The notes under the pieces were generated by a model. It did no database searches and was not told where the DNA came from. It saw nothing but the letters and a program-made list of their open reading frames with translations. Shown here in pieces: positions 2,594 to 54,500 of a DNA stretch of 64,000 nt (its first letter is position 1; each line of letters begins with the position of its first letter). Location of the stretch: the NCBI RefSeq assembly GCF_002113885.1, contig NW_018403519.1:364242-428241 (forward strand). The letters are read 5' to 3'. The translations under genes and the position numbers were made by a program. The stretch is from Mizuhopecten yessoensis (lineage: Eukaryota).

Positions 2594-5527
2594 TTACGAT
2601 ATGATAGCCTTGACCGTGCCTCTGATGTAAGTCCGACAAACTGGACACTTCCGTAAGGCCGAGGCACACATGGGACACGTGACCAAATGTCCACAAGGCA
2701 GGAACACAATACTAGCCTCCTCGTCGAGACACACCTTACATATCTTTTGTTCGCGAAGTTCTTGATTTTCCTCTGTAAGCTCATCAATACCTGTTAAACA
2801 AACAAAACATTAAGTTAAGGAAACTATCACTACAAATTCCTAAACATTCCCGTTTTCATTTAATCGAAATGGAGATGGCTTCATCGATGAAGTCCCATAG
2901 TTGGATATCGTTCCGAGACCGTGTTCAGATATTTACCAAACGTAAACTGTATGGTTATGGTAGCAGATGCTTATCATAGAATGCCAGCTTTATTTTACTG
3001 CAGATTCACATTGATGATGTTCTATGTAATAGTCTGTAACCACGTAAAGAGTTTTTAGTATTGTAGATTACAATTTGTTCACACAGTCGTAACATTAAGT
3101 CTTCCATGAGAAATCCTAAAGTACCTTTTTATGAAATTTCTATATATTGTTTAATTACCTTTCTTCGTGAGTTCAGTATCTTCACTTGTACTTTCACATT
3201 CCCTTTCCTCTTGATTATGATCGGCCTGTTTGGTTTCTGTAATGTCGTCTTCTGGGATGACATCCATGTCATCATTTTCCTCTATTTCCCAGACGATAGG
3301 CAAAAGCTTCTCAGCACACAAATCCGTGCCTGTAAAATGAACCAATGATAATAAACATATATTCATCAATTCTTTTTAAGAAATATATGGGTTAAGTGTT
3401 ATTCAAATTGACATTCAGATATTTTTTTCTTCCAAAAATCACATAATTATGTAATATGTCTCATGTTTAAAGTATTGTTTTTAAAATATTAAGGTTAAAA
3501 TATCAAATTATTACATTTTATTTACGTAATATTGAAAATACATATGAGAATAATCATCATTTATTTAACAACAATATTGACATAAATAGTTGTACAGAAG
3601 GTATGCATACCGTGACGTTTCCTGTACGCTGTAATCGCCTTTGTCAGAATGGCTTTATTGTAGCCCAGTTCCATGACGCTGAGTACAGCTGGATGTTCAA
3701 ACATGTCGATCTCTTGTCTGGACTCATCGCGCTACAAACAAAATAACATAATGAGTAATAAGACACTATTTGACAAGTATGCACTACAGGTTTGCAAAAA
3801 TGTTTGTTATCAAACATTCATGAACTGTTCGTGAAAACAGCAAGCTAGAAATTAGACATCATTCAAAATAAATCAAATTCTAATATACAGGATGCAATGG
3901 ACTTAACAATATCCTGAACAATGAACTGTGAGGGCCCCTAATTTGCACACGGTCCTTGCTTATTTCTAAAACAGCCATTATAACTGAAGCTTGCTAGAAA
4001 TATATGTTCGTAATATAATTAATTTAAACGTAAATATAATTATGTACATGTTCATTTAAATATATTGTTTTATTTGCCTTCTAATTACTTTGTAAAGACA
4101 TGCATTGCACTGTACTGCCTTAAGCTGATATAATTATTCAAAGCAGCTTTGTTATAACTCGGTACAACCGTTAATGTCTATATATTTACCTGTACATCAG
4201 GTGGTTTGATTGTTCCAGACTGGACACCCATTATGTACTTGTCGCCCTTGATCAGTTTCATGAACGGACAAAAAGGGAACCAGCGCGCATGCTCATAAAA
4301 AGGATCATCTTCCGGGTCCCATTCACGTAATCCGCCTGCGCAGTGGAAGCATCTCACGTAGTCGTTTGTTCCTATGTGTCCATACAAAAAGGAAAATCAG
4401 TAACAATATTGGAAATCAAAAGATCTAAACTTCATAGAGTTTGGAATACATAATTCATCACCTAGAAATGCATAATAATGGAGTCAGTGTGATTTATCCT
4501 TCCCGAAGGAATTGATATTACCTATATATTCGATAATTTTTACATTGAAGTAAACAATTCAAGGTTTTCCGATAGTATCCTTACCTTCATAAAAGAGACC
4601 AGCTTTAGCCAAGTCCTCGGGACGTTGTTTGAGATGCTTTGGCCAGTGTCTATATGAGTTAAGACGGGTGGCGAGTACAGAGAACTGCTCATACTTCGGT
4701 GAGACTGTCTCTAGTGTTCCAGTCGAAGTTTCGTTGGTCCTAGTATGACTAATAGAATCATGACTTGTATTATACATGTTTCCTCTGCCACTTTGATCAC
4801 GTGATTCTACTGTCTGTGTCTCGTCTGAAGGAGCTGTATCTTCTGGACTTGAAACGTGCTCAGCCTGGTGTTGTTCTAGTTGCGTTTCCTTGTCATACAT
4901 TGATTTGGCGATACGAGATTGTGCCGGTGCATTTGCCATATTTTCCTCCTTCATAGAATTGTCTGGTTTATTTTGACCTGCATCTTCACCACTTTGGTTT
5001 TGGATCTTAACAGAAGATTCTAACTCGTTTGTAGGTTTCAGTATTTCTTTGGTGGCTTCTGTTAGGTTTGAATCCTGAAATCCTATGTCAGCCGGATATT
5101 TATTGGTATTTGAGTGTTGCTGCATCTTGTCCTCAGTTCCTCGTTCTACTGACGTGTCGTTTGCTCCACCACATGCACCGGACATCAGTGCTTTCTCAGA
5201 GTTGTCTCCGTCAATACCAGCTTCAGATTCACTTGTTTGAAAGAATGGACAATTGGGAGATTTCTTCAGATGTATACATTTGGGATCATTCCCCTTTTGC
5301 CATCCACTGTACCTGAGTCCACACTGACGACACACTACCTCATCATTTTGTCCTTCGTAATGAAAGCCTGCCTCTGCCAGCACAAATGCACCTACTTCAG
5401 ATGGATAAGGGTATGAATAGAAACTTGCCAGACGTGACTGGTCGGCCATCTTTGATTTCATAGATTCGTTTCCTAATGATTGATTTTGGAACAAATAACA
5501 CCCTTCAACAGGCGGATTTATCGTCAT
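2594..5527 (-). CDS. IAP paralog 1 (BIR-BIR-UBA-RING, BIRC2/3/7-like E3 ligase), about 537 aa, 5 coding exons
   Basis: Hand-spliced complement(join(2594..2790,3159..3329,3611..3731,4190..4371,4585..5527)) = 1614 nt, all introns GT-AG. BIR1 is CRQC-x16-H-x6-C; BIR2 is [28 protein letters not shown]; the UBA-like exon reads [12 protein letters not shown]; the C3HC4 RING reads [35 protein letters not shown] and ends AIIS*. Confidence 0.93.
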
Positions 5528-39500: not shown

Positions 39501-40524
39501 GACGAATCTGGACTGATAAACGCACAAGGCCGGTTTAAGTGTACAACCTCTGGATTACGTTTTGTACAGTAAGATTCACTTCAATAATTAGCTGGTATTG
39601 TCAAAGCAAATCTGGCGCATGAATGGTTGGATGCGGTGCTTATGTAACATGAAAACAAGAACAAACGGATGTCATCAAGTAAACTCATTCACTATGTAAA
39701 TGTACAATCAAATCGGAAGATTGGTCACAAGTAGACTAGCTGTACATAAAAAGATAACTTATATTTACCAAATATCAAAAAAAAATGTTTATATTAAGAG
39801 CACTAAAACATCACTAAAAGTATTAAACAATAACAAAAAAATGGCTCGACGTTAGCTGATATAAAGTTCTGATATATTGTCTCCTACTTGTATACATATA
39901 ATTTACCTCCAGTACTTGATAATGTACCTACAATATTTTTGATACATTCCATACAACAACAAAACACACTTTGTTATACAATATTCGTGCAGTAATTATG
40001 TTTTGGATCAGAAAATTAGAAATATTCTAGCAATGGGAAAGTAAATATATAGTTGATATTTCTCCAATGTATTCATCAACCTAAACACTGTTCATAAAAA
40101 TGTATCTATTACTACAAAATAAAATCTGTAGGCATTAAATCGGGACGATGTCATTACCCACCTCTCAACTGACCTCAAATATCTCCCAAGGGGTCAAACT
40201 TTTTTTCTAGTATTGCAATTTATTTATGTCAGACCAAAAGGTATCACCATACAAACATATGCTTTTTCGGTGAGGGGCGTAAAACGGCCGAATATGGCAC
40301 TGAACCCTGATTCAGTATTTATTTTAATAAAAATGACGACTACACTGAAGTATAAAACTGTTTCCGTATGGTTGGATACAGAAATGTAGTCTGGATCTTA
40401 AATAGACTTATATCTGTCACAATATCAAGTTAAAGGCGTGTGTGATATCCACTGACCAGCATACCATCACTGAACTGGAACTCAAAAACACTAATATCTG
40501 TCAAAATTTCACTTTTCCGGTGAA

Positions 40525-43500
40525 TTACGATATGATAGCCTTGACCGTGCCTCTGATGTAAGTCCGACAAACTGGACACTTTCGTAAGGCCGAGGCACAC
40601 AATGGACACGTGACCAAATGTCCACATGGCAGGAAAACAATACTAGCCTCCTCTTCAAAACACACCTTACAGTTCTTCTGTTCACGAAGTTCCCGGTTTT
40701 CCTCTGTAAGTTCATCAATACCTGTGAAAATAGGACCCTGATTAAAACTAATAATGGTTTTGCATATATTAAATATTTACTCATTGATAAGAAAATAAGT
40801 TGAAATAAGTTGTTCAGTTAAATTAGTCATTCTTTTCTGGTTTAAAAAAAAATCATTTCGAATAAATTTACAAGTTTGACATCTTTGATTACCTTTATTG
40901 GTACTTTCCGCTGCCGTAACTAGTTCCGTTACATCACTTTTACTTTCACATCGCATTTCGGTTTTATTATCGTAGGTCTGTTCCTTTTCAGAAACCTCCT
41001 CGTCTGGAATGACGGCCGTGGTACCGTTTTCCGTGATTTCCCAGACAAAAGGCAATAACTTTTCGGCACTTAAATCCATTCCTATAGTGGAAAATTAGAA
41101 TAAAATGTATACAAATTCATGGGTCATTGGAAATAAGAATTAAAATCGTTTAAAATTGTTTAATTATATCCAACTTTTACAAAGTATTACAACTGTCAAT
41201 TACTTCTGAGTGTTTGTTAACGATCAAAACATCTTACGTCGTTCGATAATAATAACTTACCATGGCGTTTCCTGTAGATTGTAATTGCTTTTGTCAGAAC
41301 AGTTTTAGTGTAGCCCATCGCCATGACGCTTAGCACTGCCGGATGGTCATACAAGTTTAATTCCTTACTTTGTCCTAACTTCAGTTTGTTATCCTGCAAT
41401 ACATAAGGTGTAAGGCAATGTTTACAACATCGTGGCAAATACGAAACAGGATAATGTTCAATTGCAAATTATCATTGTAATATATGTGTTTAAACGAAAG
41501 TGTATTTCAAAGATCTATCTGTTTGGTAAGTTCTGTATCCTTTGTTGATCAGATATCTGTGGTCTATATATTTACCTGTATGTCAGGTAGATATCTGATG
41601 TACATATATACCTGTATGTCAGGTAGATATCTGATGTACATATATACCTGTATGTCAGGTATATATCTGATGTACATATTTACCTGTATGTCAGGTAGAT
41701 ATCTGCTGTACATATTTACCTGTATGTCAGGTAGATATTTGACGTACATATTTACCTGTATGTCAGGTAGATATTTGACGTACATATTTACCTGTATGTC
41801 AGGTAGATATCTGATTTACATATTTACCTGTATATCAGGTAGATATTTGATGTACATATTTGCCTGTATATCAGGTAGATATCTGATGTACATATTTACC
41901 TATATGTCAGGTAGATATCTGATGTACATATTTACCTGTATGTCAGGTAGATATCTGCTGTACATATTTACCTGTATGTCAGGTAGATATTTGATGAACA
42001 TATTTACCTGTATGTCAGGTAGATATCTGATGTACATATATACCTGTATGTCAGGTATATATCTGATGTACATATTTACCTGTATGTCAGGTAGATATTT
42101 GACGTACATATTTACCTGTATGTCAGGTAGATATTTGATGAACATATTTACCTGTATGTCAGGTAGATATCTGCTGTACATATTTACCTGTATGTCAGGT
42201 AGATATTTGATGAACATATTTACCTGTATGTCAGGTAGATATCTGCTGTACATATTTACCTGTATGTCAGGTAGATATTTGACGTACATATTTACCTGTA
42301 TGTCAGGTAGATATCTGATGTACATATGTACCTGTATGTCAGGTAGATATCTGATGTACATATTTTCCTGTATGTCAGGTAGATATTTGATGTACATATT
42401 TACATGTATATCAGGTAGATATTTGATGTACATATTTGCCTGTATATCAGGTAGATATCTGATGTACATATTTACCTGTGTGTCAGGTAGATATCTGATG
42501 TACATATTTACGTGTGTGTCAGGTAGATATCTGATGTACATATTTACCTATATGTCAGGTAGATATCTGATGTACATATTTTCCTGTATGTCAGGTAGAT
42601 ATTTGATGTACATATTTACCTGTATATCAGGTAGATATCTGATGTACATATTTACCTATATGTCAGGTAGATATCTGATGTACATATTTCCCTGTATGTC
42701 AGGTAGATATCTGATGTACATATTTCCCTGTATGTCAGGTAGATATTTGATGTACATATTTACACGGAGATCAGGTAGATATTTGATGTACATATTTACC
42801 CGTATGTCAGGTAGATATCTGATGTACATATTTCCCTGTATGTCAGGTAGATATTTGATGTACATATTTACCTGTATATCAGGTAGATATCTGATTTACA
42901 TATTTACCTGTATATCAGGTAGATATTTGATGTACATATTTACCTGTATGTCAGGTAGATATTTGATGTACATATTTACCTGTATATCAGTTGGTTTGAT
43001 TGTTCCAGACTGAACACCCGTTATGTACTTGTCGCCCTTGACCAGTCTCATGAACGGACAAAACGGGAACCAGCGCGCATGCTCATAAAAGGGGTCATCT
43101 TCCGGGTCCCATTCACGTAATCCGCCTGCGCAGTGGAAGCATCTTACGTAGTCGTTTGTTCCTGTGTATAAAGACAAATGAGAACTGAATCGTCGGTGGA
43201 AATTGAAGACATTAACACAATGTCTTAGTAATTATATATAATGTTTTCAATCAGTTTTATCGTTTAAAAAATGAAGTTTAGTGTTTTACAAGTTGATTAA
43301 TGTTTGAGGAATGTTACCATACGTTAACTAAACTATTTCTTTTTTTATATGTCAAAGGCTAATTATTGTTTGATGAATACGTGTGCAATTCTGTGTGTAT
43401 AGTTAGCAAAGAAACCTTCAACTTGAACCAAGATCGAGGGTGCTACCACCTACCCCAGGTCACATGACTGAATTTTCAGGCTAGTCTAAAGCCCCCTACT

Positions 43501-44516
43501 GATTTCAGTAAGGGCTGCAGAAGGCAACAAGGAGGTCCCCGAAACCTACCCGGGAGTAGTACTTAGCAGAGACTCTGTTACATGTTTGTTTAATATATAG
43601 TAACCTTACCTTCATAAAAGAGACCAGCTTTAGCCAAGTCCTCGGGACGTTGTTTGAGATGTTGTGGCCAGTGGCTATATGAGGTAAGACGGGTGGCGAG
43701 TATAGCGAACTGCTGATACTTCGGTGAGACTGTCTCTAGTGATCCAGTCGATGTCTGAATTGTTATTGTGTCAGAATGACCTGCAGAGTCGTGACCTGTA
43801 TTAAACAAGACTTCTCTGTTGTTTTGATCAATTTGCTCTACTGATTGTGTCTCGTTAGGAGCTGTAGTAATCGCCGAATCTTCCGTTCCTGAATAGTGTT
43901 CTAACGCCTCGTTTTCATTTCTCAGGTTGGAAACGTCGGAACGTGTCATCGAATTTACTGTATCCTCTCTATGTACAGCATTGTCAGGTACATCTTGACC
44001 TAATTTGAATCCATTTTCTACTTTCGGTACTTGTGTGGCCGCTGCAGGAATATTCTCGTTTTCCTGGAAGTTTATCAATGTGGTATATGTGCTGCTTTTT
44101 GTGTGTTGCTGTTTTATGTTTTTCCGTTCTGTCACTATTTCGTCCGGTCCACGTCTTGCATCAGGCCTTAACATATTTCCTGTCTCAGGACTGTTTCCAT
44201 AAACACCAGCTTCAGGTTCATTGGATTGAAAGAATGGACAATTGGGAGATTTTTTCAGATGTATACATTTGGGATCATCTCCCTTTTGCCATCCACTGTA
44301 CCTGAGTCCACACTGACGACACATTACCTCATCATTTCGTCCTTCGTAATGAAAGCCTGCTTCTGCCAGCACCAATGCACTTACCCCAGACGTATAAGGG
44401 TATGAAAAGAAACTTGCCAGACGTGACTGGTCAGCCATCTTTGATTTCTTACGTCCGTTTTCCAAAATATCCTGAGGACACACTGAACATGGTTCTGCAG
44501 TCGACGTAATCATCAT
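40525..44516 (-). CDS. IAP paralog 3 (BIR-BIR-UBA-RING), about 535 aa using the proximal BIR2 donor
   Basis: complement(join(40525..40721,40893..41081,41261..41393,42980..43161,43610..44516)) = 1608 nt, in frame, all Zn ligands intact. Confidence 0.92.
41565..42990 (-). repeat. 36-bp minisatellite made of the duplicated BIR2 exon/intron junction (39 units, 40 donor positions), paralog 3 intron
   Basis: Unit GTAAATATGTACATCARATATCTACCTGAYATACAG. Junctions run from 42980 to 41576, exactly 39 x 36 with no indels; many units are variant. Confidence 0.97.
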
Positions 44517-47500
44517 CGTGTTTAATTGGAACCTGCAATTAAATTGTTTCAGTGTATAAAGTTATATACCAATAATCACACGAGGGAACTCGGTGTAAAA
44601 CATTGCTCTCTACAACGTTATATGGCTTTAACAGGTTTAGCATTGACACTTGAATGAAGTAGAGATCTACAAATAAACGAAACTAAACTAATAATTAATA
44701 TATAATAATTCCAGGTTCTAATATACCGCTTTTTCGCAAACTAGTTTGAAGGTCGTCTCAAAGCGGTTTACAAATTATTGTCAAAATAACATGTTTATTT
44801 TATCGATCTATAAATACACGCTACGTGAATACGACGTTTCTTCAATTGTTGTACTTTTTGAAATGTACAAGCAATAAATAAAATCAAATTATGGCGTGCT
44901 TATATTAAGCACTTAAATGTTTGCTCAATAATATTTCGACATATTGTGACAAACGCACCCATATTATCAGAAGTATATACTTTTTTTTGCAATTAAGATA
45001 ATACGCTACGTTTCAAATTAATAATTTACCTTATCCTCGACAAACTGATGACATAATTTGACTTCTTTCACTAAAAATAATTCTTACACCTAACGATACT
45101 AGCTTGAAGTATACATAAGTAAGCTGACACGTGACAATAACCATGTGTGTAGGCACTTAATGCGAATGTGTATATAGTTCCTGCTTGCTGTAAATATAGA
45201 TTTTAAAAAGTAGGGTATTTTCAAAGAGCTTGTTAGTTCAGGTAATCTTATGCTTTTTTCAGTTGTTGACTTATGAACCAGTAATATAATTGGATCTATA
45301 CAATCTAGATAACATTTCAGTGATTAAACCATTAGTACGATTTACATAATTTAGATCTTCCTTTGGAGGAAAAAGTAGAATGCTTCACATGTACAACAAA
45401 TTAATCGTTAACATAAAATTTACCTGAAATAAAACTTACGTTTTGTGCCATATATCATGAAATGAACATAGTATAACCTCACTGTTCCATCTTCAGCTGG
45501 AATATTGAAAAAGAACCCGATGTAAATCCCATACCAGCTAGAACTGCTGATTTTGCTTGTTTCATTTTCGATATTTAGACATGACGTCATGTACATACTT
45601 TCGTTAGGCAAATGTGCGATTTTGGACGAAAATAGCTTTCTTGTCCCTATAACAACTGCTGTGGGTCGTCGGTACCTGGATTAGTGAGATTTAATATGCG
45701 AACTGATACATATAATTAAATCATTCTTAAACCTTACAATACCGATTTAATCGATTTGTTTGCCGTGTCAGACACGCTACAATTCGTTTTCGTCTCCAGC
45801 ATGTAGATACAGTTGAGAACTTTCCATAGATCACAATGTATTGAGTAACACAAAATGACATGATTAATGAAAAATATCATAATACAAATACAAAGCCGTA
45901 CCCCGTTGTGTCCCGTTGTAGTTGTGCTAACGAAGATTTATGTATATAGATTTGTTATGTTTCCCCTTATGATTGATTTAGCGGTTTTTATTCATTGAGC
46001 GTACATATTTCAGTATTTCTGCCCCCACTCCAGTATAACTATTCAATGTAAAAATGATCAGCTAACGATATCTATTTTAAATGTACACATTTAGACATTT
46101 AAATTATGATCCAATTAGCATGTTCACGTTGGTGATTTGGAATAGTTTACACACCAACGATATTTATAAACGTTTTCCAATTGTACACGAATCCACAAGT
46201 CACCACTGCATTTATATATTAAGTCAACTTTCAATAATCAAGAATTTAGAACCTCTGTGTTGACGTATCTATATAAAAGAAATGATATCTAAAGTCAGTT
46301 TTTTACTTTTTGGATTCACATTAATGAAAAGACGAGACTTGAGTAATGATAACAAACAAATATTATAAATGCGTTTGTTTTATAGCAATATCTCTCTGTG
46401 TCTATATCAATAGCACATGTCTGTAAATACATCGTACGAAATATGTTCGCTTACCGTCAACGATTTCGCAACCAAATCGAAATACAGGTGAACAGCATAT
46501 ATTATATATAATGACATGGGGTTTCCGTATTCTATTTTTAAACCGTTGGTAAACATTTCATATTTTGGGTCTTTACCCATCCACTCAGCGATAACGTAGA
46601 CCATTGGCATTGGATGTGGTTTACAACCAGTCTGTCATACAGGCCATAATTTTCAGAATTACTGATGTGGTTTACCATCCCGGGCTTATTCTCCTTACAC
46701 CGTGTCATAGATGGTTTCCAGGTAAATCATTCTTTGGTTTCATATTCTGTCCTAGTTTTATCGATTTTGAGTTCATAAGGCGGTTTGGTTGACAATTCTG
46801 TATACTTTTGTTACTTTAACGGTATGTATACCATAAGCTCTTAACGGAATGTCATTTACACGATATATAATTGTAATTTCTTACGTTAAATTATACATAA
46901 ATATATACTTACACGTTATATATATATATATATATATCAATAAGCCTTTAATGTTCTACATCCCTGTTGTATTAACGGAATGTCACTTACACGGTGTATA
47001 CTTTCAATTTCCTATGTTAAATTCTACATACAATATATAATTACACGTTATATATATCAATAACCATTTAATGTTCTTCATCCTTGATTTATACACGGAA
47101 CGTCACTTACTAAATATATTCTTACAATTTCTTATGTTGAATTCTACAAAAATACACAAATAATTGTATATCACCAACCCTACCCTCGTTGTATTAACGG
47201 AACACGTTCACACCTAAGTTACTGGTAATAATTAAACATTATTCAAATTCTAGCAAAGTCAATAATTGAAATGCTTTACTGGCGGATTATTTGTAAATAC
47301 TAGCAACAAATTTGTAAATAAAAGCTGATTTTTTGTCTTTTGTGTGCGATGTGGTAATTTTGAATGAAATCTTTCGAAAACTGTATTTTATTTCCACTTT
47401 TTTATGCAGAGTGTTGCAATCGTTTCCCTCCAAAATTTCCAATATGGAATTCTACACACATGTATACGTATTATAGGTAAAATGGAGTGTGTCATGGCTG

Positions 47501-47852
47501 CGATCTATTTTAAGACTATTCATCGGCAAACAATAGATGTGCCGCACAAACTACGAGAGTCACACTGTTGATAATAAAACATACTTGGTTTACGTAATAC
47601 AGCAAGTCAATAATATGTATTGTAGTTGGCCAATAAAAGATAAATGGGTGATCTTACACAGGAAAGCTTATTACTTAGCACTACTTCAGAAGCGCTAGCA
47701 CAGCTACATAATATGTACTAAGGCAATATCTTTATCGTCTGCTGCTACCGAGCAAAGCATAACATAGCATACAGGCAAATCTGATTTACTTTACCAAGCT
47801 GCTAGAACGCATTTGTTAGCGTATTACTGCCATCTAGTTAATACATACGCGT

Positions 47853-47890
47853 AGGTTTCTGCCTCGAATCAGGTATCGAGGCAGAAACCT
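47853..47890. repeat. Perfect 15-bp-stem hairpin
   Basis: AGGTTTCTGCCTCGA-ATCAGGTA-TCGAGGCAGAAACCT. Confidence 0.9.
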
Positions 47891-50800
47891 GTGTTGATGT
47901 AGATGGTGTTTAATACGGTAACACGACTGCCAAGGTAACTATGGCGACAAATCATGTATTTTGACTCAAAATGCGATTTTGTTACAAAGATATCGACATG
48001 TCGCAATAATTTGTCACGATCGGTGAAGTTAAATCATTACGGAGCACGACCACGATTTGCAATAAGTCATACGTAGGCACTGGTGATTGCAGAACATCTA
48101 TTCACACAGACAAGATATTTATAACAACCAATCACACACCCGTACTCAGCTTATTGTGTGTTTAGAAAGACTTATGCGGATTTACATTCCCTATAATAGT
48201 TCCGAAAATTACAATTTCGCATGAACAGACAATACCACGTCGCATGTTAAACCGTTAGTTGTTTTTCATTTACATCTTTAGTATCGAAGACTTACAAAAG
48301 AATCCAAAATGCGTAGAACAAAAGAAATACGAGTATAACTATAATAGACATTTGTCAATTATAAAATACGGTCCGACATTTCTTCAGCTATTCTTACCTG
48401 GAAATATTTCTTGAAATATTGATGTACCGTGTACTTTTTTTTAAAAAACAAATTGAAAAAATAGCTCGCGGATTGGTTATCCAATATTTCTATACATATA
48501 TATATATAAATAATATAATTATATGTTTTGGGCATTCAAAGCATATTCACCATTTGTAAAATAAATACGTTATCTTTTCTCTTTATCACATGAATGTGAT
48601 TGTTCATATTAAAAAATATATATAGCTTTTTTTACACTATTTGTTGGATATTAACTTTGAATACGTTTTTGCTGTGGAGAATACACACGACCATCATACA
48701 CGGCACCTTGCTTATCATTAGATGAAGGTAAACGTGAGCGTCAGGACTTGAACGTAGAAGTAAATCATTTACTAAGATGATAATTCCGTCTTTTCGTATT
48801 GCAGTGTTATCTGCCCTTGTGAGCAGGTATTGATTGAACGTCATTAGTTTGTGTGAGAATAGACGGAATACATACAACGTCGTTACCTCATACAATACGT
48901 AGGTCACCTGAATTACTCTATATTAATATTGTTGAACAAATATGTTACTGTAACAGTCGACTGTAACTCTAATGTGGAATAACCTTTTATCTGACAAATA
49001 AATGACAAAGATACTTGTTTTATCACTTAATTTCACATTTGTATCTTTTGAATAATGTTCGTTATTGAAAAACAGGAATGTCGAAAACTACTTGGTTACT
49101 TAAATTACGAAGTTACCCTGTTAAGTACGTGTACAACAATACTGGTCGACACACTACCAAGTGCTACGACACAGCTGTAAGATACTCGATTTCATGGTCG
49201 TTAAGTTTCCATTAATAGTGATAACCGTATCAGCTTCCATAAAATTTGATTTCCTGGAAATGTGTAAGTTGTTAACCAATAAGAACTCTGTCAGGATTTT
49301 TCCATTTTTAAGAAGCTTTAACTAAAGAAAGCAGTTCATTTGTAGGGAATTTTGCAATGAAAGGTTATAAATTCTCAGAATATCCATTTCGGGGATATCC
49401 ATTAAGTATTCTCTTTGGGACATACAGACAGACAGTCTACAATGGCGGAAGTCGGAAACCCCTTTGTAATAATAATCGCTATACTCCGAACCGCGTATAT
49501 CTTATCACCATATCCTTTATAACGTGAAGTATTAAAGGCTAGAAATAGACGTCGTGACCTAAACAGAACAGGTACACTTCCTACTTTAAAATATATATGG
49601 AGTGTTTTGATAGAGCCATGACTAATACATGGTCGACAGTCAACAAACAAAATTTCAAATAGTAACTGATTAAAAAAATATTAAGTAGACAATGGAACTA
49701 AACTAACAATGAATATCGTTTACAATTTAATGACATTTTTTTTTTATTTGTGAATAACAATCCATCTTCATTGACGATCTAATAAAAAGGGGGAAACTAA
49801 TCAGTTGTTTAAATTCATTTTCAATTGCTTATATACGTAGATAATTAATTTGCACAAAACAACAATGAAATATGGAATCGAATATTTTATTGATAAAACG
49901 TAAACAATAAATATACATGGAAACACACATTGCAGTCTGAATAAGATGATAGGGCAAGATCCGGGCACAAAAAGTAACAACAATGTTATATTTTTAATCA
50001 GTTAAATTTTCGTTCAAGTATGTATTTATCCTATGATATTAATTTTGTCTGAGCCAGTCGACATTATGACGGTTAAGGATGTGTTATCTATCATTGGTGA
50101 TACATATAACTACAAACCGCCTATAGAAAATAATGACTTAGTCCGTGATATGTTTTGTGCTTGCGTGTTGATGTTATTTGTAAAAATAAATCAAAAGAAT
50201 GATACAGGATTTTAAATTAAAAACAAGGCGGCTTCTGTTTAATTGTTAGACCTAATTACTTGACGGGTGTATAACTGTTTGGTTTTGTTGTTTTGGGGGT
50301 TTGTGTATTCGCGTATAGTTCACATTTGGTTTTAAGTTTTCCTTTTATTTATTACATCAAATTTCCTTGAAAATCGTTATTTAAACTTTTCAATTGTTAA
50401 ATAACATAATACATGTATTAGCATGCAATTTACACAGTTTGTTTGTGGATTATTGATACTACTAGATGCAAAATAAAGGATTATCACAAATGTGACCACT
50501 CCACTGAATGTTTTTGTGATTTATGATTATTGTTTTAAGTGTAGAAAAGCTGTTAAAAATATATATTGGGGATTTATCAGTTCAGCTGGATCATCTAGTA
50601 TTCAAATAAGACGCGTGCAGTATGTATACATACAGATCCGATTTTCTACGGAGTAACGCATCAAAAGACATTCAAATTAAAACAAAAACAATAAAACAAA
50701 AACAAAACAAAAACAAAACAAAAACAAAAGACCTTCAATCAATATTGGTGAGACTTAATTCCAAAATAAATAAATCATTTACCTGATTAAGGTTCGGTTG

Positions 50801-51347
50801 GAGGTAAACTTTTGTCCAAAAACATTTTTTTAACAAAATAACTATTTTGTGACAGGTAACAACCAAAAACAAAATAACTAAATATAATTGTCCTATGAGA
50901 AGTACAAATATCCGACTGGTACGCTGCTACAGTTTATAATTCCTATATACATGTACACAGGTATATTAAATACAAAAAAAAATATAATAGCTACCCGAAA
51001 TCCCCGTTAGCTTTTGGAAACCCATGAATCAAATATGGTGGTCGAGTCTTTTACTTTGGGACAAAATATGGTTGTACTCTCGTACATCCCAGATTGTATA
51101 ACTATTTCGGCGAACATACCAACTACCCTGGTATGACCCACAGAAATCAAAACGTCACGTTCATCAAACCGTACAATACGTGACTAATTGGACGTCTAAA
51201 TCTGAGTGTTCCGGGGAAACCTCCGACTGACGTATTGGCCATTCGCCTTAAATTCTCAATTTGTCCGTCTCTAATGTAAGTGTTAACATTAGAATAATAT
51301 ACTTAAACGTGTCCTTTTAATCTTTATTACTCTAGTTGATGGATCTT

Positions 51348-51470
51348 AATCTGAGAAAACTCACGTGGTCGGGCAAATGACCAATACCTTTTTCGTCTCC
51401 GATAGGAGAATCGAACCCAAACGCTTTCAGCAAAAGGCGTGTGCTATATCCTCTCCGCCAACTGACCATC
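51348..51470 (-). mobile_element. tRNA-derived SINE of the same family, just 3' of the paralog 4 stop codon
   Basis: On the minus strand: TGGCGGAGAGG A box, GGTTCGATTCT B box, AGGTATTGGTCATTTGCCCGACCACGTGAGTTTTCTC. Confidence 0.7.
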
Positions 51471-51551
51471 AATGATCTGGACTTCAAAAAGGCATATATC
51501 TGTCCAAATTTCATAGGTCCAGTGCAAAAGAATGGTAGCACAAGCTATGGA

Positions 51552-54500
51552 TTATGAAATGATAGCCTTGACCGTGCCCCTGATGTAAGTCCGACAAACT
51601 GGACACTTACGTAAGGCAGATGCACACATAGGACACGTGACTAAATGTCCACAAGGCAGGAACACAATACTAGCCTCCTCGTCAAGACAAACTTTACATC
51701 TCTTTTGTTCACGAAGTTCCCGATTTGCCTCTATTAATTCATCAATGACTGTAAAAAGAAAAATAATCTGATTAGGTCAAACTATTTGGAAAATTGCCTA
51801 ACGTTCTTAAAAAAGAGTCTTTCCTATTTCAGTTTTCTTCTCATTAGTTGTTCAAACATAAATTCGGAATAGAATGTATACGTGTCACATCATAAATTCC
51901 CTTTTTTATCGTTAATGCCCTTTCACATCATTAATTACCTTTCACATCATTAATTCCCTTTCACATCATTAATTACCTTTCACATCATTAATGCCCTTTC
52001 ACATCATTAATTCCCTTTCACATTATTAATGCCCTTTCACATCATTAATTGCCTTTCACATCATTAATTCCCTTTCACATCATTAATTACCTTTCAGGGC
52101 ACTTTCTACTGACGTGTCTAGTCCCATTATATCACCGATATCACCACTTCCGTTATCGTTAGTCTGCTCGTTTATAACATTGTCCTCGCCTTGAATAATA
52201 TCTATATTAGTTTCCTCTATTTCCCAGACAACAGGCAATAACTTGTCGGCACTTAATTCCATTCCTAGAATTAAACAAGAAAAAAATGAATAAACACAAA
52301 TAAATTTGCTATTGAAAATAGGACGTCAAATCAGAAGAATCGGCTATGAACCTAAACTTAAACAAACTGGTAGAACTTACAATGACTTCTGAGTGTTTAT
52401 GTGATAACCAAATATCCTACACCGTTTTAAATATAATTAATCTTACCATGGCGTTTCCTGTAGATTGTAATTGCTTTGGTCAGTATAGTTTTACTGTAGC
52501 CCATCTCCATGATGCTAAGTACAGCCGGGTGGTCAAATAAGTTTAATTCCTTACTTTGTTCTGACTTCAGTTTATCAACCGGCTACAAAAAAAAGGATAT
52601 GGCGAAATCAATACAGGTAACAACTTAGCAAACTCAAAATATGTTACTGTTCATACACACTTTATATTACTATAATGTATGTAGTTTACCGGAATTACAT
52701 TTCATCAACGGATATCTGTGTAAAGTTATATTTCCTGTTATGATAGGATTTCTGATGTACATGTTTACCTGTATATCAGGTAGATATATGATGTAAATGA
52801 TTACCTGTATATCAGGTAGATATCTGATGTACATAGTTACCTGTACATCAGGTAGATATCTGATGTACATATTTACCTGTATATCGGGTAGAAATCTGAT
52901 GAATATATTTACCTGTATATCAGGTAGAAATCTGATGTACATATTTACCTGTATATCAGGTAGATATTTGATGTACATGTTACCTGTATGTCAGGTAGAT
53001 ATTTGATGTACATGTTTACCTGTATATCAGGTAGATATCTGATGTACATATTTACCTGTTTATTTACCTGTATATCAGGTAGATATATGATGTAAATGTT
53101 TACCTGTATATCAGGTAGATATCTGATGTACATATTTACCTGTATATCAGGTAGAAATCTGATAAATATATTTACCTGTATATCAGGTAGATACTTGATG
53201 TACATATTTACCTGTATATCAGGTAGATACTTGATGTACATATTTACCTGTATATCAGGTAGATACTTGATGTACATATTTACCTGTATATCAGGTAGAT
53301 ACTTGATGTACATATTTACCTGTATATCAGGTAGATACTTGATGTACATATTTACCTGTATATCAGGTAGATACTTGATGTACATATTTACCTGTATATC
53401 AGGTAGATACTTGATGTACATATTTACCTGTATATCAGGTAGATACTTGATGTACATATTTACCTGTATATCAGGTAGATACTTGATGTACATATTTACC
53501 TGTATATCAGGTAGATACTTGATGTACATATTTACCTGTATATCAGGTAGATACTTGATGTACATATTTACCTGTATATCAGGTAGATACTTGATGTACA
53601 TATTTACCTGTATATCAGGTAGATACTTGATGTACATATTTACCTGTATATCAGGTAGATACTTGATGTACATATTTACCTGTATATCAGGTAGATACTT
53701 GATGTACATATTTACCTGTATATCAGGTAGATACTTGATGTACATATTTACCTGTATATCAGGTAGATACTTGATGTACATATTTACCTGTATATCAGGT
53801 AGATACTTGATGTACATATTTACCTGTATATCAGGTAGATACTTGATGTACATATTTACCTGTATATCAGGTAGATACTTGATGTACATATTTACCTGTA
53901 TATCAGGTAGATACTTGATGTACATATTTACCTGTATATCAGGTAGATACTTGATGTACATATTTACCTGTATATCAGGTAGATACTTGATGTACATATT
54001 TACCTGTATATCAGGTAGATACTTGATGTACATATTTACCTGTATATCAGGTAGATACTTGATGTACATATTTACCTGTATATCAGGTAGATACTTGATG
54101 TACATATTTACCTGTATATCAGGTAGATACTTGATGTACATATTTACCTGTATATCAGGTAGATACTTGATGTACATATTTACCTGTATATCAGGTAGAT
54201 ACTTGATGTACATATTTACCTGTATATCAGGTAGATACTTGATGTACATATTTACCTGTATAACAGTTGGTTTGATCGTTCCAGACTGGACACCCATTAT
54301 GAACTTGTCGCCCTTGATCAGTCTCATGAACGGACAAAAAGGGAACCAGCGCGCATGCTCATAAAAGGGGTCATCTTCCGGTTCCCATTCACGTAATCCC
54401 CCTGCGCAGTGGAAGCATCTCACGTAGTCGTTTGTTTCTGATTGTCAAGATAAAAAGAACTAATTAGCCAGTATAAATTACAGACACATTCTACATAGTG

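What the first reader, a model, noticed from the sequence alone, without database searches (positions are those of the whole stretch)
41576..54256. Each repeat unit carries a U1-like anti-donor that can hide the donor in a hairpin, in two possible registers
Seen: in the pre-mRNA the unit alternates AUAUCUACCUG (or GUAUCUACCUG) with CAGGUAAAUAU, an 11-bp stem with one mismatch. Established: the 5' end of U1 snRNA is AUACUUACCUG, nearly the same as the anti-donor. A donor can pair upstream (5-nt loop) or downstream (9-nt loop). Upstream pairing leaves only the first donor free; downstream pairing leaves the last one free. The two paralogs with expanded arrays both read CCA-ACT (Pro-Thr) where paralogs 1 and 2 read CCA-CCT just before the true donor, which weakens upstream pairing of the authentic site. 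Inference: the structure explains why about 40 decoy donors are tolerated, and might act as a structure- or temperature-sensitive splicing switch or an ADAR substrate.
Basis: partly seen in the sequence, partly recalled or inferred. Interest (0 to 1): 0.8.

Follow-up and report, generated by a model that had tools for sequence, protein, structure and literature searches.

The report
Hairpin-forming splice-donor minisatellite in scallop IAP introns
Two neighbouring scallop anti-apoptosis (IAP) genes carry an intron repeat that copies the exon end and its splice donor about 40 times, each copy with a built-in complementary arm; RNA shows only the first donor is used, so this is a known kind of repeat with an extra, functionally unproven, hairpin.

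Summary
Two 36-nt arrays lie on the minus strand (41568-42990, 40 donors; 52753-54266, 43 donors). Both start at the exon-2 donor of tandem IAP paralogs of Mizuhopecten yessoensis. Each unit holds CAGGUAAAUAU and AUAUCUACCUG or GUAUCUACCUG, giving 10 of 11 pairs with 5-nt or 9-nt loops.

RNA contigs from two runs splice from the first donor across the whole array (1586-nt GT..AG intron, zero depth on the array). Public protein models do the same. Arrays that repeat an exon end plus its donor are already known: amphioxus "mirages", and human F7, IFI6, CBS, LMNB2 and PDGFA. In F7 the first site wins and no masking structure was predicted. This scan has also noted the same kind elsewhere in this genome.

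In folding models the two registers are iso-energetic. The used donor of paralog 3 is predicted as paired as its decoys, and 10-30 °C changes little. The structure therefore does not explain the choice of the first donor. No reads bear on a switch or on editing.

Two points leave room for a decoy-masking role. The anti-donor arms vary less than the rest of the unit (post hoc p about 0.01), and one double change makes a perfect stem.

The most likely reading is an expansion-prone quasi-palindromic minisatellite. Related genes in two other scallops lack the array.

The parts
41568..42990 (-). Paralog-3 array: 36-nt units, 40 donors (1 authentic, 28 intact decoys, 11 damaged) and 39 anti-donor arms. 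It lies wholly inside intron 2.
   Evidence: TRF; unit parsing; zero RNA depth
52753..54266 (-). Paralog-4 array: 43 donors, all with CAG|GUAA. 30 units are identical; the 3' end holds older divergent units, including a 48-nt and a 35-nt unit.
   Evidence: TRF
42980..43161 (-). Paralog-3 exon 2 (second half of BIR2). It ends ...CCA ACT GAT ATA CAG, and the authentic donor cuts between 42980 and 42979.
   Evidence: Pfam BIR 1.2e-12; RNA joint; protein model P0002
41394..42979 (-). Paralog-3 intron 2, 1586 nt, GT..AG. It is removed as one piece starting at the first donor.
   Evidence: Joint 41392/42979 (cut +1) in contigs of runs X1 and X3
41260..41393 (-). Paralog-3 exon 3 (linker/UBA-like, [28 protein letters not shown]...).
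   Evidence: Joints; P0002
54256..54437 (-). Paralog-4 exon 2, ending ...CCA ACT GTT ATA CAG. The first donor cuts at 54256|54255.
   Evidence: model P0001 reads ...IKPTVIQ|PVDKLK
52564..52582 (-). Start of paralog-4 exon 3. An RNA contig joins it directly to an exon-2 end.
   Evidence: Loose end of an X3 contig at 42980. Its 19 letters match only this place in the window.
28449..28487 (-). Paralog-2 proto-array: one extra 36-nt unit, so two donors (28485, 28449) and one anti-donor.
   Evidence: model P0004 uses the first donor
4182..4204 (-). Paralog-1 unamplified junction CCACCTGATGTACAG|GTAAATAT. It already holds the short palindrome ACCTG..CAGGT.
42036..42062 (-). Perfect 11-bp hairpin AUAUAUACCUG-ACAUA-CAGGUAUAUAU in the upstream register. 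Both partners of the usual C.A mismatch have changed.
   Evidence: -11.8 kcal/mol at 37 °C
41640..41666 (-). Second copy of the same perfect hairpin, probably a duplicate of the two-unit block.

Best explanation
The arrays are "mirage"-type intronic minisatellites. They are tandem duplications of the exon-2/intron-2 junction in tandemly duplicated IAP genes (BIR-BIR-linker-RING) of the Yesso scallop. The paralogs carry 1, 2, about 40 and about 43 donors, a spread consistent with stepwise growth.

The founding unit was a quasi-palindrome. The exon end already held ACCTG-N5-CAGGT. In the intronic copy the left arm came to match 10 of 11 bases of the donor arm, most simply by a template-switch mutation. 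Every amplified unit therefore carries a donor and its complement.

The same palindromy lets single-stranded DNA fold, which favours slippage and expansion.

Splicing uses only the first donor and removes the whole array. That choice comes from position: the upstream-most site wins, through exon definition or first-come-first-served capture, as shown for human F7. It does not come from the hairpin.

In the intron RNA the stems probably form and lower U1 access to the decoys. That is a helpful side effect that makes a large array cheaper to carry. It is not a regulated switch.

Shown here: the anatomy, first-donor use, the stability and near-equal energy of the two registers in silico, and absence of the array in two other scallop homologues. 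Inferred: the template-switch origin, slippage, and masking in vivo.
For: **Array anatomy.** Array structure and the 1, 2, 40 and 43 donor counts come.

**First donor used.**
- RNA contigs from two runs (X1, X3) skip 41394-42979 with GT..AG ends and put zero depth on the array.
- A contig loose end equals the unique start of paralog-4 exon 3.
- Public models P0002, P0001 and P0004 join exon 2 at the first donor. None of the 14 homologues carries the 12-aa repeat.

**Structure does not pick the first donor.**
- Hairpin energies for the two registers are near-equal.
- The paralog-3 first donor is predicted paired yet is the one used.

**DNA fold.** Single-stranded DNA folds with z = -4.1.

**Age.** There is no array or anti-donor in the Ylistrum balloti and Argopecten irradians homologues.

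**Literature.**
- Donor-reiterating minisatellites use the first site, and no masking structure was predicted in F7 (PMC1557585).
- Mirages do not disturb splicing (PMC3087553, PMC3902484).
- A paper titled [quoted passage not shown] fits the proposed origin; only its title and the start of its abstract were read (PMC8794818).

**Decay.** Paralog-3 decoys are decaying: 11 of 39 are damaged and the frame is closed, so they are not kept as working donors.
Against: - Anti-donor arms carry far fewer variant types than donor arms or loops: 1 of 19 in paralog 3 (p = 0.009) and 4 of 33 in both arrays (p = 0.013). These tests are post hoc.
- In paralog 3, every donor-arm variant either cripples the donor or keeps the pairing.
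- One double change turns the C.A mismatch into A-U.
- In paralog 4 the first donor is predicted about 40% open, against under 5% for most decoys.
- The hairpin-less 19-nt donor array in the same gene has lost GT in 8 of 10 decoys, whereas the hairpin array of paralog 4 keeps all 42.

These points fit selection for masking. Contigs drop rare forms, and NMD would hide most paralog-3 decoy products. Low-level decoy use is therefore not excluded.
Confidence: 0.6

Rival explanations
1. Selected decoy mask. The anti-donor arms are kept by selection because they sequester the decoy donors from U1. Only thanks to them can an array of about 40 strong donors persist. The Pro-to-Thr change frees the authentic donor.
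For: - Stems are as stable as the U1 duplex.
- Internal decoys are nearly always paired.
- Anti-donor arms are depleted in variants, p about 0.01.
- There is a compensatory perfect stem in the upstream register.
- The exon stem is weakened in paralogs 3 and 4.
- The 19-nt array without an anti-donor has mostly dead decoys.
Against: - The paralog-3 authentic donor is predicted as paired as the decoys and is still used.
- Three intact UAG|GUAAAU decoys are predicted open.
- The 3' units of paralog 4 have live donors with weakened stems.
- F7 and other mirages stay silent, and no masking structure was predicted for F7 (PMC1557585, PMC3087553).
- The statistics are post hoc, and units are not independent.
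- CCT to ACT is a single event (n = 1).
- Template switching could mimic compensation without selection (PMC8794818, title and start of abstract only).
Confidence: 0.2
2. Splice ladder or switch. Downstream donors are used under some conditions (heat, infection). They would insert n x 12 residues ([12 protein letters not shown]) between BIR2 and the UBA-like region, above all in paralog 4, where 36 decoys are in frame and free of stops.
For: - The open frame runs through about 36 units of paralog 4.
- The two registers are near-equal in energy, so small shifts could move the free donor.
- Human IFI6 and CBS do use the first two pseudo-sites (PMC1557585).
Against: - No joint from a decoy appears in either contig run.
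- No public protein carries the repeat.
- The 30 identical units are too young for the open frame to mean constraint.
- The paralog-3 frame is closed after decoy 3.
- The repeat peptide matches no Pfam family.
- Predicted exposure barely changes from 10 to 30 °C.
Confidence: 0.08
3. Long double-stranded intron RNA. Because the unit is self-complementary, stretches of units fold back on one another into imperfect duplexes hundreds of nucleotides long. These could serve as ADAR, Dicer or dsRNA-sensor substrates in an immune gene.
For: The global MFE of paralog 4 shows nested long-range donor:anti-donor pairs spanning up to 336 nt. The ensemble is strongly structured (MFE -803 kcal/mol for 1877 nt at 20 °C).
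Against: - Helices are only 11 bp with a mismatch, separated by 5x5 and 9x9 internal loops.
- Co-transcriptional folding should favour local hairpins.
- No RNA coverage of the array exists, so there is no editing signal to read.
- Exonic differences show no A>G excess on the transcribed strand (table 3).
Confidence: 0.05

Closest known systems
Human F7 intron-7 37-bp VNTR, with IFI6 (6-16), CBS, LMNB2 and PDGFA donor-reiterating minisatellites (PMC1557585)
   Same: The first monomer of a minisatellite spans the exon-intron boundary, so the donor is repeated in the intron (4-25 pseudo-sites in those genes). The upstream-most donor is used. The unit length is similar (37 against 36 nt).
   Different: Here there are about 40 copies in each of two paralogs, the donor is near-consensus (CAG|GUAAAU), and each unit also holds a 10-of-11 complement of the donor. 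The F7 authors looked for a masking structure and found none. IFI6 and CBS also use pseudo-sites 2-3, which was not seen here.
Amphioxus "mirages" (Adh3, TnC, globins, PGBD5; PMC3087553, PMC3902484)
   Same: They are minisatellite-like tandem duplications of exon-intron boundaries in an invertebrate. They are unstable in length, show concerted evolution, and leave splicing undisturbed.
   Different: No built-in inverted repeat is reported for mirages. Here the array was copied along with gene duplicates and expanded separately in each.
5' splice sites regulated by a stem-loop (SMN2 exon 7 TSL2, PMC1802598; MAPT exon 10 from general knowledge)
   Same: A short stem covers the -3..+6 donor positions and competes with U1 pairing.
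   Different: Those are single, conserved, experimentally probed stems at the used donor, and they tune exon inclusion. Here the stems sit on unused intronic copies, are lineage-specific, and are untested.
Hairpins created and kept by template switching / quasi-palindrome correction (PMC8794818, title and start of abstract only; PMC7202029, start of abstract only)
   Same: An imperfect inverted repeat has arms that became more alike, including a double change that looks compensatory.
   Different: The origin here is inferred from the four paralogs only. No outgroup reconstruction was possible.

Membership tests
Mirage / donor-reiterating minisatellite | Tandem array of a 10-160 bp unit | tested here: met
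   36-nt period, 39.5 and about 42 copies
Mirage / donor-reiterating minisatellite | The first unit spans the exon-intron boundary that is actually used | tested here: met
   The RNA joint at 42980|42979 falls inside the first unit; the exon supplies GATATACAG
Mirage / donor-reiterating minisatellite | The donor sequence is reiterated downstream in the intron | tested here: met
   28 intact and 11 damaged decoys in paralog 3; 42 intact in paralog 4
Mirage / donor-reiterating minisatellite | Normal splicing from the authentic (first) site | tested here: met
   Contigs of X1 and X3; loose end for paralog 4; models P0001, P0002, P0004. Rare use of decoys is not excluded.
Mirage / donor-reiterating minisatellite | Length polymorphism (VNTR behaviour) | not tested
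   Only one assembly was found to carry the locus.
Structure-regulated 5' splice site (TSL2/MAPT type) | The stem covers the donor positions that pair with U1 | tested here: met
   In silico only: 11-position stem over -3..+8
Structure-regulated 5' splice site (TSL2/MAPT type) | Predicted structure accounts for which site is used | tested here: not met
   The used donor of paralog 3 is predicted paired (rank 20-30 of 40) while some intact decoys are open. Paralog 4 fits better (rank 4 of 43).
Structure-regulated 5' splice site (TSL2/MAPT type) | Conservation or covariation of the stem in related species | tested here: not met
   No array or anti-donor in the Ylistrum and Argopecten homologues (orthology not proven). 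Within the arrays there is one compensatory double change, probably a single event.
Structure-regulated 5' splice site (TSL2/MAPT type) | Structure shown by probing, and splicing changed by stem mutations | not testable with these tools
   Needs DMS/SHAPE probing and minigenes
ADAR / long dsRNA substrate | Extended duplex plus clustered A-to-I changes in RNA | tested here: inconclusive
   Fold-backs are predicted, but the helices are 11 bp with loops. No reads lie on the array to score editing.

The most novel reading that the evidence does not exclude
The quasi-palindromic unit makes the array a cooperative RNA device. There is one more donor than anti-donors, so exactly one donor must stay unpaired. 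Small energy differences between the two registers, multiplied over about 40 units, would decide whether the free donor is the first one (normal IAP) or a distal one (long-insert or NMD-targeted IAP). That would give a sharp switch of IAP output set by temperature or helicase activity, and selection would keep the anti-donor arms intact.
Probability: 0.08. Interest if true: 0.7.

Novelty: new variant of a known kind. Interest (0 to 1): 0.3.

Why it matters
If the anti-donor arms really mask the decoys, these arrays would be a natural large-scale test of how RNA structure and position together decide 5' splice-site choice. Each array offers 40 identical strong donors, with a built-in control in the hairpin-less 19-nt array of the same gene. 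They would also show how a genome tolerates runaway amplification of splice signals.

As it stands, the finding mainly adds a hairpin-bearing example to the known class of splice-site-duplicating minisatellites. Such arrays seem common in this scallop genome, and here they sit in the strongly expanded bivalve IAP family.

It also warns annotators that the long open frame through the paralog-4 array is not coding.

Tried and rejected
- **Local accessibility** (RNAplfold-type, W 200, L 150) suggested the first donor is 5-6 times more open than the decoys. The values were dominated by window-edge averaging and disagreed with global partition functions, so I do not rely on them.
- **First constraint-based script** timed out.
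- **Growing-transcript model**. D1 is open only until the first anti-donor is made. After that, all donors are paired at 1e-4 to 1e-8, with an odd/even effect. This is an equilibrium model, not a kinetic one.
- **Raw-read RNA runs** X21 and X24 put only 5 and 97 reads on the gene, mostly paralogous RING-exon reads, so rare decoy use could not be measured.
- **Coding-repeat reading** was rejected. The paralog-3 frame has stops, there is no Pfam match, no public protein carries the repeat, and RNA skips the array.
- **Recursive-splice reading** (AG|GU at each unit) was considered and dropped. The upstream tract is pyrimidine-poor, and no intermediate joints were seen.
- **Other paralogs.** Look-ups of two further M. 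yessoensis paralogs (P0010, P0011) found no record.
- **Pecten maximus.** Locus L002 shows no tandem repeats, and its exon 2 did not align by blastn.
- **Paper searches.** Two searches failed on syntax.
- **Rules followed.** The N run at 34225-34552 was left untouched.
Full report
**1. What is there**

The window is 100% identical, over the 4992 nt of locus L004, to Mizuhopecten yessoensis assembly GCA_002113885.2, scaffold NEDP02000192.1. On the minus strand it holds four tandem IAP paralogs. I call them P1-P4, with exon-2 donors at 4190, 28485, 42980 and 54256.

Pfam confirms a full BIR, a second BIR split by an intron, and a C-terminal RING.

TRF reports two 36-nt arrays:

| Array | Coordinates | Copies | Matches |
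|---|---|---|---|
| P3 | 41568-42990 | 39.5 | 92% |
| P4 | 52753-54266 | about 42 | 33.5 copies at 98% |

Both arrays start inside the last codons of exon 2. The exon supplies GATATACAG and the intron begins GTAAATATGTAC....

P1 has the junction once. P2 has one extra unit, giving two donors. P3 has 40 donors and P4 has 43. These counts are consistent with growth from 1 to 2 to about 40 copies.

The 5' part of the P4 array is 30 identical units of a private variant (CAAGTATCT). Its 3' end keeps older units like those of P2 and P3. The big expansions are therefore recent and separate in each paralog.

**2.

Every unit reads anti-donor (AUAUCUACCUG, or GUAUCUACCUG in P4), a 5-nt loop, the donor arm CAGGUAAAUAU, then a 9-nt loop. 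The arms pair at 10 of 11 positions, with one C.A mismatch.

A complement that good occurs in 5e-4 of composition-matched shuffles of the unit. It is one event that was then amplified.

The resemblance to the U1 5' end is 9 of 11, taking AUACUUACCUG from general knowledge. It is the automatic result of complementing a near-consensus donor.

The CCA-ACT versus CCA-CCT difference is real. It weakens the exon-donor stem from -5.4 to -1.2 / -2.1 kcal/mol. P3 and P4 share much intron sequence (an 81.6% alignment over 2.4 kb), so this is probably one inherited change.

**3. What the RNA does**

I laid two Logan contig runs and two raw-read runs on 40400-44600.

- In both contig runs, one contig skips 41394-42979. 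This is 1586 nt with GT..AG ends on the minus strand. It joins ...GATATACAG to GATAACAAACTG..., which is the first donor joined to exon 3.
- The two downstream introns are also removed.
- Depth over the whole array is zero.
- A further X3 contig ends at 42980 and continues with 19 letters that match only the start of P4 exon 3 (52582-52564). A P4-type transcript therefore also leaves from the first donor.
- The raw-read runs were too thin on this gene to measure rare forms.

Public protein models give the same picture:

| Model | Paralog | Junction |
|---|---|---|
| P0002 | P3 | ...IKPTDIQ\|DNKLK |
| P0001 | P4 | ...IKPTVIQ\|PVDKLK |
| P0004 | P2 | ...IKPPDIQ\|PDYKLK |

None of the 14 homologues carries the [12 protein letters not shown] repeat.

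The repeat frame is closed in P3: a TAA follows decoy 3 and further stops come later. In P4 it is open for 36 decoys, but that part is too young for the open frame to carry meaning.

**4. Does the structure explain the choice of donor?**

Single hairpins are stable, and the two registers are almost equal:

| Paralog | Upstream register, 37 °C | Downstream register, 37 °C |
|---|---|---|
| P3 | -7.5 kcal/mol | -7.9 kcal/mol |
| P4 | -7.8 kcal/mol | -7.4 kcal/mol |

At 20 °C the values are -11 to -12 kcal/mol. This is close to the donor:U1 duplex in the same model.

Global partition functions over the whole intron (maximum span 400) give these results:

- Intact internal decoys are nearly always paired.
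- The preferred structures are long fold-backs of units on units, not a tidy row of hairpins.
- In P4 the first donor is about 40% open, rank 4 of 43. Three 3' decoys are more open.
- In P3, where the RNA evidence is direct, the first donor is paired to the first anti-donor: G+1 unpaired 0.004, 0.005 and 0.013 at 10, 20 and 30 °C, rank 20-30 of 40. Three intact UAG|GUAAAU decoys are 56-93% open.

The tool's own fold of exon end plus four units likewise pairs D1 with A1.

P1 and P2 have a stronger stem over their own donor, which the P2 protein model uses.

By order of synthesis, the first anti-donor appears 20 nt after the first donor, so co-transcriptional folding should hide the authentic donor first (inference). 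The structure therefore does not single out the first donor, and temperature does little within the animal's range.

**5. What is known**

Minisatellites whose first unit spans an exon-intron boundary are described in human F7 (37 bp), IFI6 (25 pseudo-sites), CBS, LMNB2 and PDGFA.

For F7, 50 constructs showed that the pseudo-sites are functional but that the most upstream site is always chosen. The authors predicted no masking structure and found no intronic regulatory element (PMC1557585).

In amphioxus such arrays are called mirages and do not disturb splicing (PMC3087553, PMC3902484).

Earlier notes of this scan report the same kind at several other places of this scallop genome, some with hairpins. 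One follow-up concluded that the hairpins were a by-product of local duplication (unchecked leads).

The array itself is thus a member of a known kind. The built-in complement is the only new element.

**6. Is the complement selected?**

Points in favour of selection:

- In P3 the anti-donor arms show 1 variant type of 19 (p = 0.009). In both arrays together they show 4 of 33 (p = 0.013).
- In P3, every donor-arm variant either cripples the donor (GT lost in 7 units, -1G or -2A lost in 4) or keeps the pairing (wobble, or a change at the mismatch position).
- One double change (C to A in the anti-donor, A to U in the next donor) makes a perfect 11-bp stem in the upstream register. It is present twice, at 42036-62 and 41640-66.
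- A 19-nt donor array at exon 4 of P4 has no complement, and 8 of its 10 decoys lack GT.

Points against selection:

- The tests are post hoc, on units related by duplication.
- The older units of P4 do carry live donors with weakened stems.
- A paper titled [quoted passage not shown] suggests that apparent compensation can arise without selection. I read only its title and the start of its abstract (PMC8794818).
- IAP homologues in Ylistrum balloti and Argopecten irradians have short plain introns at this position, so nothing here is old.

**7. Verdict**

Most likely (0.6) this is a young, expansion-prone, quasi-palindromic mirage minisatellite.

- Its palindromy comes from the ancestral ACCTG..CAGGT at the junction, extended by template switching.
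- The same palindromy lets single-stranded DNA fold (z = -4.1), which favours slippage.
- The first donor is chosen by position.
- The stems probably dampen the decoys as a side effect.

A selected masking role remains possible (0.2). A splice ladder or switch (0.08) and a dsRNA or ADAR role (0.05) have no support in the data I could reach.

Noticed in passing
window 51885-52096 (minus strand): A second mirage in paralog 4. A 19-nt unit (GAAAG|GTAATTAATGATGT) at the exon-4 donor is repeated about 11 times. The unit holds no complement of the donor. Only 2 of the 10 decoys keep GT, 1 is GC and 7 are GG.
   Followed up: partly
L005 501-53293 (same scaffold as the window); proteins P0001 and P0003: The public gene that yields P0001 spans 52.8 kb across several paralogs. 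P0003 joins the first exon of paralog 4 to exons 2-5 of paralog 1 (...IKPPDVQ|RDESRQ). This is either read-through splicing between paralogs or an annotation chimera.
   Followed up: no
protein P0012 (Logan-derived, 561 aa): A related IAP carries a coding tandem motif (PKHEFPSAPKREFPSALKREFPSE) exactly at the BIR2-to-UBA linker, where the scallop arrays sit. This linker may be a recurrent site of repeat gain.
   Followed up: no
L001 1061-2777 and 5877-6703 (Ylistrum balloti): Large arrays flank the IAP homologue: 13 bp x 132 (TGACATTAGGTAG, which contains a donor-like AGGTAG) and 38 bp x 22. Their relation to neighbouring exons is unknown.
   Followed up: no
window 40400-40681: Run X24 piles 97 reads on the RING exon. 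96 of them run off at 40525 into a different sequence. They come from other paralogs that share the RING exon but not the 3' end, so read counts on this exon cannot be assigned to one gene.
   Followed up: no
window 39381-39501 and 46929-47148: Two further short tandem duplications lie in intergenic or intronic DNA (58 bp x 2.1, 100% identical; 120 bp x 1.8).
   Followed up: no
window 53028-53075 and 52957-52991: Within the paralog-4 array, one unit has a 12-nt internal duplication that gives two donors 12 nt apart. One 35-nt unit shifts the frame of all later decoys.
   Followed up: yes
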